From NCBI GenBank assembly GCA_030704615.1, contig JAKLZA010000273.1:1-25000 (forward strand): DNA of 25,000 nucleotides, given 5' to 3'. The stretch is from Takakia lepidozioides (taxonomy: Eukaryota; Plantae; Bryophyta). The notes under the pieces are model-generated. The model was not told the DNA's origin. It was given only the letters and a program-made list of their open reading frames with translations, and did not search any database. Below, in pieces: positions 5,258-21,319 of the stretch. Both the position numbers and the translations under genes were made by a program. Each line of letters begins with the position of its first letter. The stretch's first letter is position 1.

Positions 5258-6411
5258 ACATGATCGCAAGGTTTGCTGTTACATTCAAGTGACAGGGTTG
5301 CTGTTGCGTGTTTGCACTAACTTTGGGTACTACATTCGTGGACATTTTGCAGATACATGCAAGCTTAATCCGACCCACAACAGGAGCAATCGTGTCATTA
5401 GGAAGGGAGAACCGCTAGGATGGAATTATAATTAGGGTGAAGATTGGCTTTTTGTGACTTTCTTGACAAGATTGGTAGGTCGACGATTTCTGGGAATTCT
5501 CCGAGACCAAGTTCCGGCCTTCTAAGCACCACGGCATCAGGTGCATATCTATACGACATTCAGTTTGGGCGGTTATATGATCACTGCACGAGCATTTCTG
5601 GAAAGGCACATGTTAGAATGAAAAGTCCTTTGTGTATGTGCCCTGTCAACTGTCGGCAGGGTCTCAGGCCTGCTGAGTTGTTGACGGAACCTGCCCTCAC
5701 GCCTGGGTTTTGAGTTCTCATTCCAAGGTTGTGGAGAACAAGGTCACCACTGTCTATTTGGTAAGGCTGCATTACAGAGTCAATCATGCCCTTTGAAAAA
5801 CCTTTGTACATGCTTGATTGCAGCTATGTGTGCTCTGCTTCTGTGTGTGCTGAGCAAATTTTCACACATGTTGGTGGCACATGCAACGTAGGATGCTAGT
5901 CCGCAAATTCCTTCGCATGCTTAGGATCGAATGGTCCTGCAAGTCGTTGAGGAGTACTGTGGTAATTATCTACCTTGTTAGTGCCATGTTATGAGCTAGG
6001 ACCGAGACTGCCCTTAAGATATTTTTATGCTCAGTTTCTTCTTTGTCATGGTTTTCATCTAAGAATTATCTTAGACTGATTTTTCTATTTATTAATCATC
6101 CTCCGGGTTCCTTTTAGGTAACTAGTGCATCTATAGCACATGTGCAGACATTGTTAGCAAGCTATTATGTTGGTCCACTGCAAATACGACAGTTGAAAAC
6201 TATTCCAGTGTCAGTAATTATTAGTTTGATTGACGTCTTCGGTCTAAATTGCATAGCTTGATCCCATGAAAACCTAGCAGTTGGTATGGCAGTTGTAATG
6301 TGCTGCTCCTAGGATAGTTACAAGTGATGATGGTGGAAGTGCCTTCTGACCTCTCTTTGCGGTGTCTAATTAGGTGTTGACTATATTCACATAGGAGTTT
6401 GAATTGGAGCT

Positions 6412-8371
6412 ATGGCACGCACTGCCATGCCTGTAAGGCATCTGGCCACCAAGGCGGCCTGCAAGTCCGCTCCAGCTTTTCGGGGAGAGGCAACTGCAAG
6501 ACGCCTACCCTACGCAAGTCCGCTCCAGTTGACAGAGGGGAGGATCATTCTGAGGGGGAAGATGGTTCTGAGGAGGAAAGTGGCTCTGTGGAAGAAGATG
6601 ACTCTGCCGAAGAGGATCAAATTGGTAAGTTGCAGGGGATTAAATGAGTATTCATTTTTTATTGTAGAATTTTTGTACTGTAATATGGTAACATTCTTCA
6701 AACAGATGGTGACTTTGCTAGTTGTATCTCTTTGAGAACGAGTCATGACTTTGTTTTCACAAATACCAAATATTTGTTAATCTTCTGTTAATGTCTTACT
6801 TTACTGGCACCAATGTGTGTAGGTTCACCAACGGTGCTTACGGTAGGCGCTCAGAGGCAGCTCCTTTTCACAAAACTTTTGAGCGCTCTTTCGGATGAGA
6901 AGTATGGGACGTTTGCCGCAAGTGAAGTAATCCCACCTTCTCAGAAAGGATCTATCCTAGAATTGTGTCTTCCTCTCTATACCATAGACATTGTTAAACT
7001 ACGTGCTGTTGGTGAGCAGTTGGCCTTTGGATGGCAGATGAATTTCTCCAAATTGACCTTTCCTGGGACACCAGAATTCATTTCGAAAATTATACAGCAG
7101 TGGGCTTTGAAGGCAGTCCGCGTATTGGGTCGGTACGGAACTGCTGTGCAACTGGAAGCCCGCCCTGATAAGCTTCTGCTCTTTGAGAGAGGTGGCCACT
7201 TTAAGTTTTGTGGAGATAAGGAGAAGGCAAAAGGAATTTTTGCAACATTTATTATCCAGCTTCCTACCGAAGAGGGTTATAAAGGGGGTGAATTAGTGGT
7301 TCGCCGCAACAACTCGACAAAGACATTTAACTGGCTCAATCGGATTAGCAGAATTGGCTTTTGTTACAGTGTCTTCTTTGGCGATTGTGACTATGAGGTG
7401 CGCAGAATAATTTCGGGCACTCATGTGTGCTTGATGTTTGATTTGGTAAGGCTTGATCCATCTTCAGATGAGGCTTTGCATCAAGCACTGATTTCCAGTA
7501 AAGTGAGAGAGGCTGAGGCTTCATTGCAACCCTGGTCGCAAGATGTAATGAGCGAAGATATCAAATCTTTTGTAAGAAATTGGCTTTTCCATTGGAGCAT
7601 CGTTATTAGGGAAACAAGTTATCATTTGCTGGGTTGAAGGGAGACGACAACATTGTGGCAGAGGTATTAAGGAGTTGTCAAAACAAAAATGGAGAGAGGT
7701 TATTGGACCTGCACCTCTGTCAAGTAACTAAATATCAGCATGGCAATTATGTGGAGATTGATGAACGTGATAGATACAATTATGGCCATGATTCTTCTTC
7801 TGAGGACTTAGTTGATGACAGTGCTAAGGATCATATTATGCGGGATGTTGGACGAGAAGAAATTTCTATCAAAGGTTGGATTGGATTGGATGACAAGGAG
7901 ACTGTGGCTTTCCAGAAAGTGCAGATGGATTTGAAGAGGGAAGTTGTTGTGGGAGAGGGAATGGAACCTTTTTGGGCTAAACCGGATGCAACAAAAGTAT
8001 AGGAGGTACAAATATGAGTCTGGAAACACTCTTGAGCACTGGTACCATAGAGCCATGATATTGGTTTGGCCTAAAAGCGTTGCAAGTTCACTTGCTTGTG
8101 AAACAAGTGTTTCTGGAGCACTAGACCTGTTGGAATCTAGATTGGGGATCAGTGACCCAAACTTTCGAGTACATTTACATCAGATTGTGTGCTACTGTGC
8201 GAACAATGCATCTAGAGTGTGGAAGCATCTAATGAGGTTGGCCGGCATGATAAGAAGAGAGAAAGGCTCGACACGGAGGATGCTGGACTTGACGTCACGA
8301 GGAAGAGAGACAAGAAGACAAAGAGTCACACAAGCAATATCATCGATTTGTCTTCTGATGTCGATGAATAG
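6412..8371 (+). pseudogene. Two-exon gene: histone-H3-tail-like N-terminus, acidic tract, 2OG-Fe(II) oxygenase-like domain, NLS/SIM-like C-terminus; several disruptions
   Basis: Exon 1 (6412-6624) reads MART..VRHLATKAACKSAPA, then after a frameshift LRKSAPVDRGEDHSEGEDGSEEESGSVEEDDSAEEDQI. The intron is 6625-6822 (GTAAGT...TGTAG, phase 1 at both ends). Exon 2 has KLLLFERGGHF..GD.EK..G.FATFIIQLP..GY.GGELVVR, FFGDCDYEV..I.SG, LEHRY..LSFAGLKGDD and GNTLEHWYHRAMILVWP. Frameshifts lie near 6490, 7570, 7995 and 8222, with an in-frame TAG at 7607-7609 and a probable true stop at 8369-8371. Confidence 0.8.
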
Positions 8372-9444
8372 TCTTACAATGTGTTTTTGGAAAGATGTCT
8401 CATGGTGTTGAAGCTTTTGGTATATTGAATCTGGTATCAATCTGCCAGATGAATGCTGCTGGCTAGCCAGGTTTATTGGATTCCAAACGAGTGTGGCCGC
8501 AATGTTGGTAAGTTTGTTGTAGCAAGAACATTGTCCATTAGTAGAAGAGTCGCGCTACTCTCAATAGTTGATCAGGAGCAACATGTAAATTGCTTCAACT
8601 TTGAGTCTATTTTCCTTGCAGTTCTCCTGCAGTGTTAGATGGTATAGTTGTGCACTGACTCTTTGTTGTGGTAGTGTACCTGAATTTTGGCTTTCTGATT
8701 TTAAACAAGGTATTAATCAGTACGAAGGAGATTAGGTAGGATCCTAAAACAGAGTAGTGTGTGTTGGAACTTGGAACTTGTGAAAGTTGTGTGTGGGTTT
8801 TTCTTCTTGTCTCATGCAGATTCATTTTGAATGAATAATCTTTTGATCGAAAAGAGGCCGGAGTTCTTCTTTGGTTTGTGAAGTAGATGGTGTCATTGAT
8901 GTGTTCAGAAATTGCCTCGATTCTGCTTATTCTGTTACCACGAGTTGAAAGAGGTCTGATGACTCTCTGGAGCTGTCTGGTTGATGTGCTATTGCAGTTG
9001 TGGGCTAAGTTCAAGTATGACTGATATGTTAAATACCCTAGTAAGTTGTTGACTCATGAACAGTAATGAGTCATTGACTGAATATAGTTGTGACTTGTGT
9101 TGTGATATATTTTTCTTTTTTATTTTTAATCATGAAGAATCCGTCTTTTGTTGCCGAATTTGACTGAGCTTTTCAAGAGTGATATAGGTCTGAAAACTCT
9201 AATTTGATAATACTGTAGTTTGATACCGAGGAGTTTAGGTCTCACTTGCTCTGTGGCTTGGCAGGGGTTTTTGAGGCCCATGCAATCTTGAGGTGCTTAT
9301 TTTAGAGTCTGCTTTTAAGATTGGGTTCTCATGCTCTCAATTCCTGATTGCTTCTTGTATTATGCTAGTTCAGGAATAATATGTTGTGTGGAGTTACGAA
9401 GGTGAGACGATGCTTGCTAGATTGTTGACTTCCACTGTGAATCA

Positions 9445-15253: not shown

Positions 15254-18200
15254 ATGCTGTCTGCTAACGTCCCTACCTCATTCTTGTTGCTGGGTTCCAA
15301 AAGAAGCAAACCGGTATGCTCATCTTCAAGCCCCCCTGAATTTAGCTCACAGCAGTTGAAGCATCCATTAATTCATTGTAGGCAGAAGGGAAATAGCAGG
15401 GAAAATTGCCGCACCATGTTTTCGTCTGACTTCAATTCAAGTCTTTCAATGGTCACGGGACTCGGGAAATCACTTGTTCAAAGACCCGGGCAAATGGGTA
15501 GCCAAACTGACCAAACGTGTGAGAATCCTGAGGTATCCAAGGCCAACAGACGGGAAGAATTAAATGGCTCAAGTACCCAACAAAAGGATTCAAGACGTAC
15601 GCCTCAAGAGGAGCAGAAATTAGATTGGGAAAATCTGCCGACCCTACCCGAGGAGGTGGATGCCTCTTCTAAGCATCCATTAGACCCTCATAGACCAAAT
15701 TTCAGCCCCCTCTTGCCAGAAGCATTGCGGCCATATCCTTCGTTTGAGGGCTGGTTCAGCCGGCTCTGGGACCCTTCAAGTGGGCTGAGCGTGGCCGTGG
15801 TTATGGCTACCAATTATGCGACAGACGAGAGCCAGGTCACCCTTCTCTTCACGCCAGGGCCGCACGAGGTTGGGAAAGGCAATGGGGCTTCCAAAGGGGA
15901 CAGAGAGAGCATCACGTCCGGGTACACTTATGCTGTGGCCGTCAAAACAAAGGTGGGTCTATTCTCCCTCGACTGTTGTCCTACTGTGTGCCAGATCTTC
16001 TAATTTGGGACCTTGCTGGCTGAGAGACCGGCTGCGAGCTCGCTAAACAGTTTGATACTGAGATTAACATCCAGCTGGGAGCTTTAATTTTGCAGGGACC
16101 ATCCCGCACAGGCAATGGCAATGCTTTGGCACTACATTTGTGAGGGAATTCCCTGAAGATAGTATTATGCTACGCTGTAGTCGATTCAAACTTAAGTTGA
16201 ATCAATCAATTCTCTTTTCCTGTGTATATACAAGATGATCAGTATTTTGTGCAGGTTCATCATCCTTGCTGTTCAGGAATGTGGCATAGGTAATTTTGCA
16301 TGACGCAGAAATCTCAGAAGGACTTGAAATCTCATGCTTGAAATCGGAATGCTAGCTCCGTCAGAGCTTCCTAAGAGAGGAGAACCCATTCAGACACTTC
16401 CACTGGGGGGCCAGTAGGGGGAGGATGGGCGAGAGTTAGAAAAGAGAAACAAGTTCATAAGGAAGGAACTTCCCGTTCACTGATGCCCAAAAACAAAAAG
16501 GGGGCAGGTGGGCAGGGGACATATGAACTTTCAGTATTTCTGTGAATGGTGGGTTTTGGTGGATGTGTAGGATGCAAGGTTCTCAGAGATGGAAAATGCG
16601 GAAGAATGGGACGAGAATAACTTGGGACTGGAGCCGAAGGGCTTCGAATGGGAGGCCCGCAGGGTAGGCCGCATTGTAGTCACCCCCCACGTAACTGATA
16701 TCGATGTCACTGTGGAAGGCTACAATTTCAAAGCACATCTGACCAAAGAGGTCTTCTCTTCTCCCCCTTTGTTTGTTATACGGTTCTCTCCCATAAGATC
16801 CTTCTTCTTCTCTCTCTCTCTCACTGAAGTCTTCCACTATGAAGATCAGAAATGCTTGGCACTTGCCTGCACTAGGCTCTCACCCTTAGACAATCACTCG
16901 AGCTATAGTTTTTATCTTTGGCTCTGGTTTTGTTTGGTTTCTCATGCTTTCTTCCGTTTTGTCCCATAAGCTCTATGAGCTTCCCGCGGACGTTATAAAG
17001 CACCATTTCATTTCATTTCATTTCATTTCTCTTTGTTTCTCTCTAGCCTCTTCCTTTCCTTCGGGGAGTAGTTAAATTTTTCCATCTTCTCTTCCTTCTC
17101 TGGGCTTGTGTTCGAGCATGTAGACTCAAAACATTTTGTATCCGTCTTGTTTTGTGTTATGATTACTCACACTTGGATCTCTTCTGTGTGCCATTTGTAT
17201 AGTTGCTGTGGGATGCTCATAAATCAGAGAAGGGCCCTGAAGGGTGGGCAAGATATGTGACCATAATCCCCACACACTGGTATGTATACAGTCTTGGATC
17301 AACTTGCGAATATAGCTTTTCAAATCCAGAGAAGGGCATAAACAACTCAGGCGTTGGGTGGGCACATTTTGAGAAGAACTGGGGTCAGACCTTCCCAGCA
17401 GGGCATGTCTGGTTACAGGCCTGCACAGCAGAAAATACTTCTCAGGTTTGGTGCTTCAGAACTTGGACTTCTTCTGAAACCATATTACTAAAGAAAGAAC
17501 CTTGATAACCTGCATGGGAAGCCCAAAGACAACCCAAGACAGCTGCCAGGACGGCCTATGAGACCCAATGGAGTGAGATTGAAGTGCAGACAGAAATGCT
17601 CACCCATGCACAGTTGCTATAGAGCAGAAAGGGGAGGCAGATAATCAAACACCATTTGAACTAAACTTACTAAATCCAACCTGCGAAAAGTTTTGAATGA
17701 GGCCATCAAGGTCATGGAAGAGAAACTTGCATGATGGCCACAGAAAAAGAGGGACCTGGATCGACCTAGAAGAGATCTGTGAATGTTGAAGATCAAAATC
17801 TCCCTGCGTCCCAAGTGGGCTGATTTTTACATCCTGGGGTCTTGCAGCTGCTGTGTGCAGGAGCGTACTTCAAGACCCCAGGGGGCAAATTGGAATCACC
17901 CTACATCTTTTCAATGGCCTATCGCTCAGCCACCCTGCAATTGGATTTTCGAACAAATGATGTGGGCATAGTGTTCAAAGACATTCATTTTGCTCCCCTC
18001 GAGAGCCGCTTCTCTGTCACTGCAGTTGGCCCATCACACACCGTGGAGGTGAGTTCTCTCTCTCTCTGTCTCTCTCTCTTCAATGGCCACAAGGCTAGTC
18101 AATGGCCACAAGGCTACGGCAAACAACGTCTTATGAGTACAATCTCTCTCTCTCTCTCTCTCTCCCGCTCAAACTGGGCGCGGGGTCAATGGCCACAAGG

Positions 18201-21200
18201 CTATGGCAAACAACGTCTTATGAGTACAATCTCTCTCTCTCTCTGCCCTTTTCCTCTCCACAACTGGTACACCTCTTACAATGTGGAGGGCTGTAGAAGC
18301 ATTGCTGGACTCAACCTACATGCATTTGAGTATGATGTCAAGGGCAGCCATCAACAGTGAATTCTCTGTAACCCTATTCTTGTGGGCTGTGTGAGAGTGC
18401 CGTGGTGCTTTCAGGAAGAGTGTCATATAAGGCAAAAACCGATGATGAGTCGGGAGGGTTAAGTATTTCAGAGGGAAGTATGAGCCATTCACTGTATCAT
18501 TTCTCTTTCATATGCACCTCAATGGTCGTTGCACTGCTGCTGTGCAAGACCACGTGCCTGTGATTGCATGGCCATTCAGTGTGGAAAGAATAAGACACAG
18601 AGAGAGAGAGATTGTACTCATAAGACGTTGTTTGCCGTAGCCTTGTGGCCATTGACCCCGTGCCCAGTTTGAGCAGGAACAAAAGGGACAGAACCTACCT
18701 CTGTCAGGGGCTGACATTGGTAGTGTGACTTACCATCATATATAGAATTAATCCGGGTTTCCCAGATGTCCTCTAGAAATCCCTTCACACAAGCATCAAT
18801 CTGCTGTGTGTGATTTGCCCAAAAACTAGGCCTCAGGAGGGCCTGGGCTTTTGGCTCAGCCTCGAGACTTTCAAAGTTGTTAAACAGGGGTACAGGCACA
18901 ATTCCCTTGATAGAATTGAAGAGAGCGTCTCTTTGGTGAGAGAACCCCGGACAGTGTATCAGAAAGTGAATACTGTCTTCAGATTGCCCACACAGCGGGC
19001 AATTGCACTCTCCCTTTCCTCTCTGCTTCTGTTTGCTGTTCAAAGGTAGGCTTCCTGCCCCGAGTTTAAATTTCAGTCTAGTGCCGAGAGTGGGTAGACC
19101 CTTGAGGTCATCCAAGATGTCCTCCCCCATGTCACTGACTGGAAACAAGTTCAGGGAAGTTTTCTGCCTAACCTCATTTTCATCAGACAATCTCATGGCA
19201 ACAGACATGGCTGAGGACACTACAGCCTCTAAGTCAGATTTATCCAGCAGGGTCAAGACTTGCGGATCCAGGTCCAGGTCCTTGAGGATCTCTTCTACTC
19301 TCTTCTGCCAGGACTTAGCCTGTTTGACAGGGCGGTCCTGTTTCCAAGATATAGAGTCGATTAACTTAGGATATCTGGTGTTGGGCATATGTTGCAGCTG
19401 ACCCCACCATCTGACCTTGAATTCATCTCGTCGGGAGCTTAAGGACGGAATGCCAAACTCACCCCGAACAGCCACATTGGCTGTTTTGGAGCATGCTGAC
19501 ATACACTCCTTAAGCACCCCCACTTGAATGGATTCTAGAGACTTTGCCTGGTTGGAGTTATCAACCCATTAGCAGATCCGTACTCCAAGGCAGGTCTAAT
19601 AACGCGACAAAGCATGGTTTTCTTAACCTCAGAGTTGACCCCTCTGCAGTGGAAAAGTTTAGTGAGCCCCAGAGCTTTGCCCTTGCCAGTTTGAACAACT
19701 TTCCGGATATGTGCATCCCAATTACAATTGGAGGAGAACTCAACGCCCAGGTAAGTGTAGGAAGGGAGGACCGGGATCTCTTGGCTACCCCACTGCCACT
19801 TAAGATCACTTCCTCCCTCTCCTCTGTCGTTGACTGCTACCACTGCACATTTGCTGACATTAGCCTCTAGCCCCCAAAGATCAAAGTATCTCTTCGCGCA
19901 ATCAATCAACTCCTGGAGATTGGTTGGAGTCTCCCCTATGCCTGCGAAGTCATCCGCAAACATAAGGGCTGGTATGGTGGTATCACCCACCCTTAACCCA
20001 AATCCCTCACTTTCCACATCCTCGAGGAGTTGATTGATGAAAACATCGAAGAGCAGAGGGGAGAGAGTACATCCTTGAGCTACACCTTGGTCTATGTCAA
20101 AGAAGTTGGACTTCTGTCCGTTAACAGTGACACAGCTTTTGGTGTGAGCATACAAGTTGTGGACAACTCTCCACATCTTTCCCTTGATCCCACAAGACCA
20201 GAGGCGGAACCATAGGCCATCTCTCCACACTGTGTCATAAGCCTTTTTGACATCCAGGAAAAAGACATAAGTGGGTTTCCCTTCTTTTTTCCTTCCCTGG
20301 ATAATCTGGCTTAGAGTGAAGATATGATCCACACAGCCCCTGTTTCGCCGAAAGCCAGCTTGGCCTTCGTGGAAACAACCTCTAGACTCCAGATCAACCT
20401 CGAGACGAGTATTTATAACTCTGCAGAATGTCTTGCCAACAGCATTGAGGAGCGTGATGCCACGGTAGTTCCCCGGTTCTTCTCTGTCACCCTTCTTGTA
20501 TAGATTGACAATGACCCCCTGTCGCCAGCGAAAGGGGATCATTTCAGTCTTCCAGATAAGGTTAAAGAGGAGAACTAGGGCCTCTATCATGGGATCGCCA
20601 CCGTGCTTGATAACCTCGTTGACAATACCATCAGGTCCACCAGCTTTATATCCATTTAAATGTTCAATTGCTTCCACAATCTCAGAAGAACTAATGGGAG
20701 CATTATAAGCCATTGAAATATACTCCAGTTCATCAGGGCTGTTTGAATCATAGGAACAGTTTTTCCAACTGTGTCCCTCCATTCAGCAGAAGACCCCTCA
20801 CTGTTAGACCTAGAAGTTCTGCCAAGGATACTGTAGTGAGTTTCAAAGGTTTTGACAATGTCAACCGATGAAGTCACCACTGCACCTTTAGTAGTCTTCA
20901 GCGCTTGTACTTGCTGACCGTTTTTCGGCTTGTACAAACGTTGAAGGGCCAACCAGAATTTCTTGTCATTACCACCATGGTGGTTTGAGTTTATTTCACT
21001 GTATAACTTGTCCCAGTATAATTTCTTCTGAGACCTAACAAACTGATTGATATCTTTACGGAGCTGGTAGTACCTCGCCCGCAATTCTCTGTTGGTTTCC
21101 AAATTGCAGCACTCTTTATAGAGGGCTCGTCTCTCAGCTATCTTGAGTTTAATCTCATTAGTCCACCAATTAACTGCTCTACTGCAGACAATTAGTTTCC

Positions 21201-21319
21201 TCCCAATGATCTTGTCAGCCACGGAGGAAACGAAACTCTCCCAAGAGTCCACTGCTCTTTCGACTTCATTTCTTGCGTTAACAGAGCGTGACTGAAGTTC
21301 TTGGAGCGATTGGACAAAA

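What the first reader, a model, noticed from the sequence alone, without database searches (positions are those of the whole stretch)
6412..8371. Histone H3-tail mimic spliced to a 2OG-Fe(II) oxygenase-like domain, with NLS-like and SIM-like ends
Seen: exon 1 encodes MART and RHLATKAA(C)KSAPA, which correspond to H3 residues 1-3 and about 18-31. The K27-S28 context is kept, and R26>C is a single CGC>TGC change. There is no histone fold. An acidic tract follows, and the donor G|GTAAGT (6624/6625) and acceptor TAG|GT (6822/6823) are phase-matched, joining exon 1 in frame to the oxygenase exon. An alternative frame at 8228-8371 gives KKRERL...RKRDKKTK...IIDLSSDVDE* (bipartite NLS-like, SUMO-interacting-motif-like). 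Known: 2OG-Fe(II) oxygenases include chromatin demethylases and hydroxylases, and ARKS-type histone mimics can be modified by or bind histone writers and readers. Inference: the ancestral gene encoded a nuclear protein carrying its own H3K27-like decoy or docking peptide. I do not recognise this architecture. This copy is broken.
Basis: partly seen in the sequence, partly recalled or inferred. Interest (0 to 1): 0.82.

Follow-up and report, generated by a model that had tools for sequence, protein, structure and literature searches.

The report
Histone-H3-tail exon on dead moss oxygenase
This is a transcribed but broken moss gene whose first coding exon was copied from the tail of histone H3 and spliced onto a prolyl-hydroxylase-like nuclear protein; two related copies show the fusion in frame, so the odd architecture is real, although whether the histone-like tail ever acted as a chromatin decoy is untested.

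Summary
Exon 1 (6374-6624) starts MART and then matches histone H3 residues about 15-34. In PDB and 5.8-billion-protein searches its only non-self matches are H3.

An RNA-type contig from another accession shows the predicted GT..AG intron (6625-6822) and a further 5'UTR intron.

The downstream domain folds (pLDDT 88) as a prolyl-4-hydroxylase/PHD-type 2OG oxygenase. It belongs to a large uncharacterised PF13640-like family, which includes Ceratodon, Calypogeia and Adiantum proteins. The NLS-like and SIM-like tail is the family's genuine C-terminus.

Two related loci in another assembly carry the same H3-like, acidic exon in frame with the oxygenase. More distant relatives start at exon 2.

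The H3-like segment evolved about as slowly as the enzyme domain (pN 0.23 against pS 0.54).

This copy is a pseudogene:
- a 53-bp duplication frameshifts exon 1;
- there is a TAG at 7607;
- about 827 bp are deleted;
- two 1-bp indels are specific to this accession.

Three of the four catalytic positions are also substituted here, so this subfamily was probably not an active enzyme.

A decoy or docking role for the tail remains inference. All three H3-tailed copies seen are damaged.

The scan noted a second H3-exon copy heading a RING gene elsewhere in this genome (s1-454531).

The parts
5934..5961 (+). 3' end of an upstream non-coding (5'UTR) exon; donor G|GTAATT
   Evidence: Spliced contig of run X5 joins 5960/1 to 6373/4 with GT..AG ends; sequence read.
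5962..6373 (+). 5'UTR intron (412 nt)
   Evidence: Joint that skips 412 nt, GT..AG, in X5 contig 7.
6374..6624 (+). First coding exon: H3-tail-like peptide followed by an acidic Ser/Glu/Asp tract. It is frameshifted internally.
   Evidence: The homologous exons in L001 and L002 are in frame.
6412..6489 (+). ATG and the H3-derived coding stretch MART..(A)MPVRHLATKAACKSAPAFRGE, matching H3 residues 1-4 and about 15-34
   Evidence: The listed PDB phmmer hits are all histone H3. A profile search finds only H3 fragments apart from the query's own ORFs.
6461..6566 (+). Direct repeat with copies starting at 6461 and 6514 (spacing 53 bp, 2 mod 3). It duplicates the (R/C)KSAP codons and shifts MART out of frame with the rest of the gene.
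   Evidence: the repeat finder family D2; three-frame translation; absent from L001 and L002; present in accession X5.
6531..6613 (+). Acidic tract built of 18-bp (6-codon) repeats, of the type SEGEDG/SEEESG/SVEEDD/SAEEDQ
   Evidence: the repeat finder family D1. Homologous acidic tracts are present in L001 and L002.
6625..6822 (+). Phase-1 intron (198 nt), about 80% identical to the L001 intron
   Evidence: RNA joint with GT..AG ends; alignment with L001.
6823..7564 (+). Prolyl-hydroxylase-like 2OG-Fe(II) oxygenase domain (frame 0). Family positions H129, H190 and R200 read C (7209-7211), Y (7392-7394) and H (7422-7424); D131 is kept (7215-7217).
   Evidence: AF2 model, pLDDT 87.8; Foldseek hits to P4H/PHD2/PKHD structures; column counts; 2202 relatives.
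7564..7565 (+). Site of a 1-bp deletion (frame 0 to frame 2), specific to this accession
   Evidence: X5 has an extra C after 7564, while DNA run X1 agrees with the window. L001 also has the extra base.
7607..7609 (+). In-frame TAG (HRY*GNK); L001 has AAG here
   Evidence: No difference is listed in X5 at this place.
7988..7993 (+). Site of a 1-bp insertion (frame 2 to frame 0), specific to this accession
   Evidence: X5 leaves out 1 base at 7993. L001 lacks a base at about 7988.
8227..8231 (+). Breakpoint of an internal deletion of about 827 bp (about 275 codons; frame 0 to frame 2), relative to L001 11319-12146
   Evidence: blastn of the window against L001; P0001 sequence. A loose end at 8229 in X1 points to a paralog without the deletion.
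8231..8371 (+). True C-terminus of the family: basic clusters KKRERL (8252-8269) and RKRDKKTK (8300-8323), SIM-like IIDLSSDVDE (8339-8368), stop at 8369-8371
   Evidence: Homologous to the P0001 C-terminus ..HDRKRQRQ..RKKDKKT..FIDLSSED. The motif recurs across the family.
8372..8786 (+). 3'UTR (approximate end)
   Evidence: X5 and X6 contigs reach 8507 and 8786. Homology with the region downstream of the L001 gene.

Best explanation
The locus is a transcribed, spliced, unprocessed pseudogene. It belongs to a small moss subfamily of a large uncharacterised family of prolyl-4-hydroxylase/PKHD-like 2OG-Fe(II) oxygenase proteins (PF13640-like, about 750-970 aa). Eukaryotic members of that family often end in a basic cluster plus a [VI][VI]DL[TS] motif.

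In the ancestor of this subfamily, a copy of the 5' part of a histone H3 gene (start codon and tail codons up to about G34) became a new first coding exon. That exon was extended by an acidic Ser/Glu/Asp repeat tract. It is spliced in phase 1 to an acceptor that already lay just upstream of the family's original start codon (MV[TP].E). That original ATG has since been lost in the H3-tailed copies.

The encoded protein was an H3-tail-like peptide, then an acidic tract, then the P4H-like domain, then a long C-terminal region ending in NLS-like and SIM-like motifs. It was under purifying selection.

In the window/L001 branch the iron and 2OG ligands are substituted, so that protein most likely acted as a non-catalytic nuclear binding protein.

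The window copy was then disabled by:
- a 53-bp duplication in exon 1;
- a nonsense codon;
- an 827-bp deletion;
- two further 1-bp indels in this accession only.

Today the locus most likely makes only a non-functional, NMD-prone RNA.

Shown: the anatomy, the splicing, the homologies, the lesions and the past selection. Inferred: the route of exon acquisition, nuclear localisation, SUMO binding, and any histone-mimic role.
For: - Splicing and transcription.
- Only H3 matches the exon-1 peptide.
- In-frame H3-like, acidic exon with the same phase-1 donor and acceptor in L001 and L002.
- Family size and closest relatives. P0001 is 77% identical; Ceratodon, Calypogeia and Adiantum proteins are at 33-50%.
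- PF13640 reaches its gathering score in relatives P0004, P0005 and P0061.
- P4H/PHD fold.
- Catalytic columns: H129, H190 and R200 are 119-120 of 128 in the family and D131 is 124 of 128. The window has C, D, Y, H and P0001 has H, E, Y, L.
- Past purifying selection: window against L001 gives dN/dS 0.25 (CI 0.19-0.33) over 456 codons.
- Window against L002: domain dS 1.5, dN 0.34. The H3-like P16-A29 segment has pS 0.54 and pN 0.23; T22-A29 has 4 synonymous and 1 non-synonymous difference.
- Lesions.
- More distant relatives start at MV[TP].E directly behind a phase-1 acceptor.
- Monophyly of the three H3-tailed copies is not rejected (AU p 0.29).
Against: - No intact H3-tailed copy was seen. 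L001 has a 1-bp deletion in exon 2, though this could be an assembly error. L002 has several in-frame stops.
- The free tree places L002 weakly outside window+P0001 (84/79).
- The H3-tailed architecture is documented from only two sources (the window's organism and one ENA assembly). I could not show that these are different species.
- The source H3 gene was not available, so the route of acquisition and an H3.1 or H3.3 origin remain open.
- The segment tested for selection was chosen after it had been seen.
Confidence: 0.72

Rival explanations
1. The H3-derived tail was a working histone mimic. As an H3K27-type (ARKS) peptide on a nuclear, SUMO-binding scaffold it was bound or methylated by K27 writers or readers (PRC2, ATXR5/6-like enzymes, chromodomain proteins), or it served as a pseudosubstrate for its own P4H-like domain. 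In this it would resemble EZHIP, JARID2 K116 or PALI1 in animals. The window copy is a recently dead member of that functional family.
For: - TKAARKSA is kept between L002 and the window despite near-saturated synonymous divergence (4 synonymous and 1 non-synonymous change; pN 0.06 against pS 0.63).
- Over P16-A29, pN is no higher than in the enzyme domain.
- ARKS is intact in L002 and in the second repeat copy of the window.
- The conserved NLS-like and SIM-like C-terminus fits a nuclear protein.
- K27-type mimics are known regulators of PRC2 (PMC6513997, PMC8319299).
Against: - L001 has lost the motif: LATKA became LPINQ and the ARKSAP codons are absent, while the rest of its ORF stayed under selection.
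- The K4-K14 part of the tail is deleted in all copies.
- The in-frame copy in the window reads ACKS.
- All three copies carry disabling lesions.
- There are no binding or methylation data.
- The sample is small and the segment was picked post hoc.
Confidence: 0.22
2. The H3 piece is a neutral passenger. A partial duplication of an H3 gene supplied a promoter, a 5'UTR intron and a start codon to the oxygenase gene. The few histone-like residues were carried along without a function of their own and are simply wearing away.
For: - There are different deletions in the tail in different copies, and the motif is completely lost in L001.
- The original start ATG downstream of the acceptor is lost in the H3-tailed copies only, which fits a swap of start codon.
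Against: Under neutrality, and at the synonymous divergence seen between L002 and the window (pS 0.54-0.65), about 18 non-synonymous differences would be expected in P16-A29; 7 are seen. The acidic tract and the splice phase are also conserved.
Confidence: 0.4
3. The present-day transcript still has a product. The MART ORF as spliced encodes a 78-residue peptide (H3-like head, basic out-of-frame body, stop 7 codons into exon 2) that could act as a small histone-tail-like protein or as a regulatory upstream ORF.
For: - The transcript is made and spliced in a second accession, and exon 1 is identical there.
- The ORF starts at the first ATG of the exon.
Against: - The out-of-frame part has no relatives, and the duplication that creates it is absent from L001 and L002.
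- There are no translation data.
- Identity of 251 nt between accessions is not significant, given 7 differences in 1530 nt elsewhere.
Confidence: 0.05
4. Chance or artefact: an independent H3 pseudogene or transposon fragment lying next to an unrelated gene, or frameshifts that are assembly errors in an otherwise intact gene.
For: - The two 1-bp indels are absent from accession X5.
- The window is rich in LINE fragments.
Against: - RNA joins the exons, and related loci have the same junctions in frame.
- An independent DNA contig set (X1) agrees with the window at both indels.
- The duplication, the TAG and the deletion are shared by X5.
Confidence: 0.03

Closest known systems
Prolyl 4-hydroxylase / PKHD-type 2OG-Fe(II) oxygenases (Pfam PF13640 2OG-FeII_Oxy_3; P. 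putida P4H 4j25/4iw3, PHD2/EGLN1, YbiX/PiuC-type 3dkq)
   Same: The double-stranded beta-helix fold is the same (Foldseek E 4e-7 to 1e-5). Relatives of the window protein reach the PF13640 gathering score and keep HxD...H...R. Some metagenomic members are named 'YbiX-like dioxygenase' by their source.
   Different: The window protein has C-x-D...Y...H at the ligand positions and does not match PF13640. The family has a long extra C-terminal region of about 500 residues with no Pfam match and an NLS/SIM-like end. No member is characterised, and the substrate is unknown.
Histone H3 (N-terminal tail, residues 1-34)
   Same: MART plus P16-G34 has 13 of 20 identical residues in the window. In L002, R8-A29 is nearly complete, including APRKQL.TKAARKSA. 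The resemblance comes from descent (a copied exon), not convergence.
   Different: There is no histone fold (no PF00125 match). K4-K14 (window, L001) or about six residues around K4-K9 (L002) are deleted. The tail is followed by an acidic repeat tract and an enzyme-like domain.
Endogenous H3K27-type histone mimics: EZHIP, JARID2 K116, PALI1 (PMC6513997, PMC8319299); H3K9-type: G9a, LIG1 (own knowledge)
   Same: It is a short ARKS-like motif on a non-histone nuclear protein.
   Different: Those mimics are short convergent motifs with shown binding to PRC2 or to readers. Here a 20-30-residue stretch is truly H3-derived, sits at the very N-terminus as in H3 itself, and has no functional data. It is in a plant.
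Chimeric genes formed by partial gene duplication or exon shuffling; the worn H3.3 exon copy heading a RING gene in the same genome (scan note s1-454531)
   Same: A 5' fragment of one gene supplies the start codon and first exon of another. The same donor gene family (H3) is involved in the same genome.
   Different: The recipient gene differs. Here there is RNA evidence for splicing and there are paralogs that share the fusion. I did not check the RING case.

Membership tests
2OG-Fe(II) oxygenase superfamily, P4H/PKHD branch (PF13640) | Double-stranded beta-helix fold | tested here: met
   The AF2 model with a 128-sequence alignment has pLDDT 87.8 and pTM 0.80. The top Foldseek PDB hits are P4H, PHD2, PKHD and vCPH, probability 1.00.
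2OG-Fe(II) oxygenase superfamily, P4H/PKHD branch (PF13640) | HxD...H iron-binding triad | tested here: not met
   The window has C129-x-D131 and Y190, where 119, 124 and 120 of 128 relatives have H, D and H. The closest relative, P0001, has H-x-E and Y.
2OG-Fe(II) oxygenase superfamily, P4H/PKHD branch (PF13640) | Basic residue (Arg/Lys) that binds the 2OG C5 carboxylate | tested here: not met
   The window has H200 where 120 of 128 relatives have R. P0001 has L.
2OG-Fe(II) oxygenase superfamily, P4H/PKHD branch (PF13640) | Match to the Pfam model at its gathering score | tested here: not met
   The window pieces and P0001 give no PF13640 hit. Relatives P0004 (28.8 bits), P0005 (28.5) and P0061 (32.8) pass the 27-bit cut-off. 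Homology of the window to these relatives is secure (E 1e-47 to 1e-52).
Histone H3 | N-terminal tail sequence | tested here: met
   The listed PDB hits of the exon-1 peptides are all H3 tails. The match is partial: residues 1-4 and about 15-34.
Histone H3 | Histone fold (PF00125) | tested here: not met
   No piece of the locus matches PF00125. The tail is followed by an acidic tract and the oxygenase-like domain.
Histone mimics (functional class) | ARKS/ARKT-type motif in a non-histone protein | tested here: inconclusive
   ARKS is intact in L002 and in the out-of-register second copy of the window. The copy in frame with MART reads ACKS, and the motif is absent in L001.
Histone mimics (functional class) | Binding to or modification by histone writers or readers | not testable with these tools
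   This needs peptide methylation or pull-down assays.
SUMO-interacting motif | Hydrophobic core [VI][VI]x[VIL] flanked by acidic residues or Ser | tested here: met
   The window has IIDLSSDVDE at the C-terminus. Equivalent motifs (VIDLT, IIDLT, VIEID, FIDLSSED) end about 14 of 86 long family members (12 by the pattern search plus P0001 and P0003 by eye), against 0.3% of internal 18-residue windows. SUMO binding itself was not tested.
Unprocessed (duplicated) pseudogene | Introns retained and disabling lesions relative to intact relatives | tested here: met
   Two introns are used in RNA. The lesions are a 53-bp frameshifting duplication, a TAG at 7607, an 827-bp deletion and two 1-bp indels. 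Three of the five lesions are shared by a second accession.

The most novel reading that the evidence does not exclude
Mosses hold a gene family in which a true copy of the histone H3 tail (K18-K27 region, ARKS kept) has been maintained by selection at the N-terminus of a catalytically silent prolyl-hydroxylase-like, SUMO-binding nuclear protein. This would be an endogenous plant H3K27 mimic that titrates, recruits or is methylated by PRC2 or ATXR5/6-type writers or their readers. Such a plant counterpart of EZHIP or JARID2 would have arisen by exon capture rather than by convergence.
Probability: 0.2. Interest if true: 0.85.

Novelty: new variant of a known kind. Interest (0 to 1): 0.55.

Why it matters
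Histone mimicry is known from viruses and a handful of animal regulators, where short motifs arose by convergence. Here a 20-30-residue piece of H3 itself was captured as the first exon of an unrelated nuclear protein, and it appears to have been kept under constraint across old paralogs.

If an intact member exists and the tail is read or written like H3K27, it would give a natural, genetically tractable decoy for studying Polycomb or ATXR5/6 specificity in a haploid model plant lineage. It would also be a clean example of exon capture creating a regulatory peptide.

The work also draws attention to a large, widespread, uncharacterised P4H-like protein family with a conserved SIM-like C-terminus. 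If the tail is only a passenger, the locus is an instructive but ordinary chimeric pseudogene.

Tried and rejected
- Pfam on all six ORF pieces gave no significant hit.
- A word-index search with the 270-aa piece found nothing; the length filter excludes the 750-970-aa relatives.
- A single-sequence AF2 model was useless (pLDDT 38) and was replaced by an alignment-based model.
- A profile of the family against PDB sequences gave only a marginal PKHD hit (E 0.08).
- A profile of the exon-1 peptides against 5.8 billion proteins found only the query's own ORFs and H3 fragments, and no further H3-tailed family members.
- The metagenome scan found 16 loci, all distant relatives (42% identity or less) without an H3-like exon.
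- tblastn with the exon-1 peptides found no H3-like exon in the sequence held upstream (about 1.5 to 10 kb) of the Ceratodon, Calypogeia, P0003 and P0005 genes.
- The N-terminal extension of Calypogeia P0162 resembles the KSAPV-acidic part only marginally (shuffle p about 0.01). I treat it as a lead only.
- The transposon-cargo idea: homology between the window and L001 is confined to about 4.2 kb. I saw no transposon protein inside that unit, and the Ceratodon member sits among ordinary genes, so I did not pursue it. Terminal repeats were not searched.
- Literature searches found no description of an H3-tail/oxygenase fusion.
- Exons and frame pieces were searched separately by reference.
Full report
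**What is in the sequence**

The window comes from a moss-like plant genome. It holds LINE reverse-transcriptase fragments and a DUF2921 gene fragment nearby.

At 6412 an ATG opens MARTAMPVRHLATKAACKSAPAFRGE. phmmer of the first 30 residues against all PDB chain sequences returned 89 matches. The 60 listed are all histone H3, aligned to H3 residues 15-35, with a best E of 0.06. The match is P16, L20-A25, K27-A31 and G34, plus the MART start. R26 is replaced by Cys (TGC).

The acidic tract that follows (6531-6613) is made of 18-bp repeats. It lies in another frame. 'GCAAGTCCGCTCCAG' occurs twice, at 6461 and 6514. The spacing is 53 bp, which is 2 mod 3, exactly the shift from the MART frame to the acidic and oxygenase frame. 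The second copy reads LRKSAPV, so it keeps the Arg.

Frame 0 has a TGA at 6378-6380 and no ATG in the exon. The MART ATG is therefore the only start that could ever have served the long ORF.

**Transcription and splicing**

Contigs of run X5, from another sample of the same organism, behave as RNA. One 451-nt contig joins 5934-5960/1 to 6373/4-6623/4 to 6822/3-6994, and both joints have GT..AG ends.

A second X5 contig runs unbroken from 6978 to 8507. It carries an extra C after 7564 and lacks one base at 7993. Those are exactly the two places where the window changes frame. DNA contigs of X1 agree with the window at both places.

The two 1-bp indels are therefore real and specific to this accession. 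The 53-bp duplication, the TAG at 7607-7609 and the contiguity across 8228 are shared by X5.

**The protein family**

The window pieces give no Pfam hit. An exhaustive HMMER search nevertheless finds 2202 relatives.
- The best is P0001: 760 aa, 77% identical, from an ENA assembly (locus L001).
- Next, at about 50%, come proteins that include Ceratodon purpureus KAG0569730 ('Fe2OG dioxygenase domain-containing').
- Calypogeia fissa and Adiantum proteins follow.

Several relatives reach the PF13640 (2OG-FeII_Oxy_3) gathering score.

With a 128-sequence alignment, AF2 gives a confident model (pLDDT 87.8). Its best PDB matches are Pseudomonas prolyl-4-hydroxylase, PKHD-type oxygenases, PHD2 and a viral collagen P4H. 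The domain is thus a P4H/PHD-type 2OG oxygenase fold, not a JmjC demethylase.

The nearly invariant family positions H129, D131, H190 and R200 read C, D, Y, H in the window and H, E, Y, L in P0001. Both proteins also share a 14-residue loop deletion. This branch had therefore probably lost catalysis before the window copy died.

**The C-terminus**

P0001 ends ..HDRKRQRQ..RKKDKKT..FIDLSSED. This matches the window's frame-2 tail at 8231-8371. The window lacks about 827 bp (L001 11319-12146) just upstream of that tail.

A pattern search found basic clusters followed by VIDLT, IIDLT or VIEID-type endings in 12 of 86 long family members, and P0001 and P0003 add two more by eye. Only 0.3% of internal 18-residue windows match. 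The NLS-like and SIM-like end is thus a genuine, conserved family feature.

**Is the H3-like exon part of the gene family?**

Yes, for a subfamily.
- In L001, 470 nt upstream of the P0001 ORF, lies MARTASSARQLPINQEDHSKEEGGSAEEDDSAQEDQM. It has the same G|GTAAGT phase-1 donor, an intron about 80% identical to the window's, and the same acceptor.
- In L002 (the locus of P0024, same ENA assembly, 55-57% identical, HxD/H/R intact) the upstream exon reads MQRTSTMGFAPRKQLFTKAARKSASIYGEKDYSAEENNSAEDEK. It ends in a phase-1 donor and reads in frame into the oxygenase exon.
- The L002 peptide matches H3 residues 8-32 at E 3e-5, and all listed hits are again H3.

The acidic tracts of the three loci are homologous.

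More distant members (P0002, P0003, P0004, P0005, P0022, P0164) begin at a Met just inside exon 2 (MV[TP].E..QRQQ). Where sequence is available, that Met sits directly behind a phase-1-compatible acceptor. I found no H3-like exon in the upstream sequence held for their genes, about 1.5 to 10 kb.

In the H3-tailed copies that Met codon is gone (ACG in the window, GTG in L002).

The simplest reading is that a 5' fragment of an H3 gene was captured upstream and spliced into a pre-existing 5'UTR-intron acceptor. I know from the literature that plant replacement-H3 genes have a 5'UTR intron just before the ATG (Chaubet-Gigot et al. 2001, listed in PMC1482700). The three loci also have one. I could not compare them with a moss H3 gene, so this remains inference.

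In the maximum-likelihood tree, window and P0001 pair with 100% support. L002 sits weakly elsewhere. A tree that holds the three together is not rejected (AU p 0.29).

**Selection**

| Comparison | Result |
|---|---|
| Window vs L001, 456 codons | dS 0.57, dN 0.14, omega 0.25 (bootstrap 0.19-0.33) |
| Window vs L002, domain | dS 1.5, dN 0.34 |
| Window vs L002, H3-like P16-A29 | pS 0.54, pN 0.23 |
| Window vs L002, T22-A29 | 4 synonymous, 1 non-synonymous difference |

The window/L001 branch was constrained for most of its history despite the lost ligands. The H3-like segment is no faster than the domain, so it was translated and constrained in at least these two lineages.

Against a strict requirement for the tail, L001 has turned LATKA into LPINQ by non-synonymous changes and lacks the ARKSAP codons.

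The numbers are small and I chose the segment after seeing it.

**State of the copies**

| Copy | Lesions |
|---|---|
| Window | 53-bp duplication, TAG at 7607, 827-bp deletion, two 1-bp indels, plus in-frame deletions of 9-14 codons |
| L001 | One 1-bp deletion early in exon 2; otherwise a 760-codon open frame |
| L002 | At least four in-frame stops and a frameshift |

I saw no intact H3-tailed gene. A loose end in X1 at 8229 translates to ..NLVIIGNPS, like P0001 ..AIIGNVPANEAS. This shows another paralog in the window's organism that lacks the 827-bp deletion. I could not retrieve it.

**Verdict**

The architectural inference is supported: H3-derived tail, acidic tract, 2OG-oxygenase-like domain, NLS/SIM end. 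The copy is a transcribed pseudogene. The enzyme-like domain of this branch is probably inactive.

The decoy or docking role is an attractive but untested idea, to which I give about 0.2. I found no description of such a fusion in the searchable literature.

An earlier scan note (s1-454531) reports another worn H3 exon heading a RING gene in the same genome. That hints that H3 5' fragments are recurrent donors. I did not check it.

Noticed in passing
Family-wide (P0026, P0045, P0061, P0096, P0097, P0121, P0130, P0133, P0164, P0001, P0003): Eukaryotic members of this uncharacterised P4H-like family repeatedly end in a basic cluster followed by VIDLT, IIDLT or VIEID, a classical SUMO-interacting-motif shape. 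This suggests a conserved nuclear, SUMO-linked role for the whole family.
   Followed up: partly
P0150 (Naegleria gruberi XP_002675419), residues 383-637: A protein annotated as 'type IIB DNA topoisomerase' carries this oxygenase-like domain behind its N-terminal part. It also ends in a basic cluster plus EIICIDD.
   Followed up: no
L010:1-330: Upstream of the P0022 gene lies a mini-ORF MAMARMKLRSSQESHQK that ends in a phase-1 donor (G|GTATCA). It sits about 270 nt before a phase-1 acceptor in front of MVPTE. This may be a badly worn counterpart of the H3-like exon in another organism.
   Followed up: partly
L007:6001-6180 (Calypogeia fissa P0162): The N-terminal extension ..EQKSPSVSNGEEDHGS.. 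resembles the window's RKSAPVDRGEDHSEG (shuffle p about 0.01) but is contiguous with the ORF, with no intron. It could be a remnant of the same exon in a liverwort, or chance similarity between two acidic stretches.
   Followed up: partly
window:8229-8444: DNA contigs of X1 show 2-4 times the local depth here and break at 8229, 8262 and 8327. One loose end encodes the part of the protein that the window has deleted, so at least one further paralog exists in this organism.
   Followed up: partly
window:5268-5605 and L001:8619-8926: There is a conserved block (about 72% identical) upstream of the gene in both loci. It is partly covered by an X5 contig (5400-5643). It may be a promoter or an additional 5' exon.
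   Followed up: no
window:4876-5238 (+): An ORF matches DUF2921_N (E 2e-8). It is a fragment of a plant-specific gene just upstream of the locus.
   Followed up: no
window:671-1045 (-), 18621-21252 (-): These are LINE reverse-transcriptase ORFs (RVT_1, E 1e-9 and 1e-33). The second belongs to the element already noted by the scan (s1-473963).
   Followed up: no
L002:1-1287 and 17540-17872: The H3-tailed pseudogene in L002 lies between piggyBac-like (DDE_Tnp_1_7) and hAT (Dimer_Tnp_hAT) ORFs, so the neighbourhood is transposon-rich.
   Followed up: no
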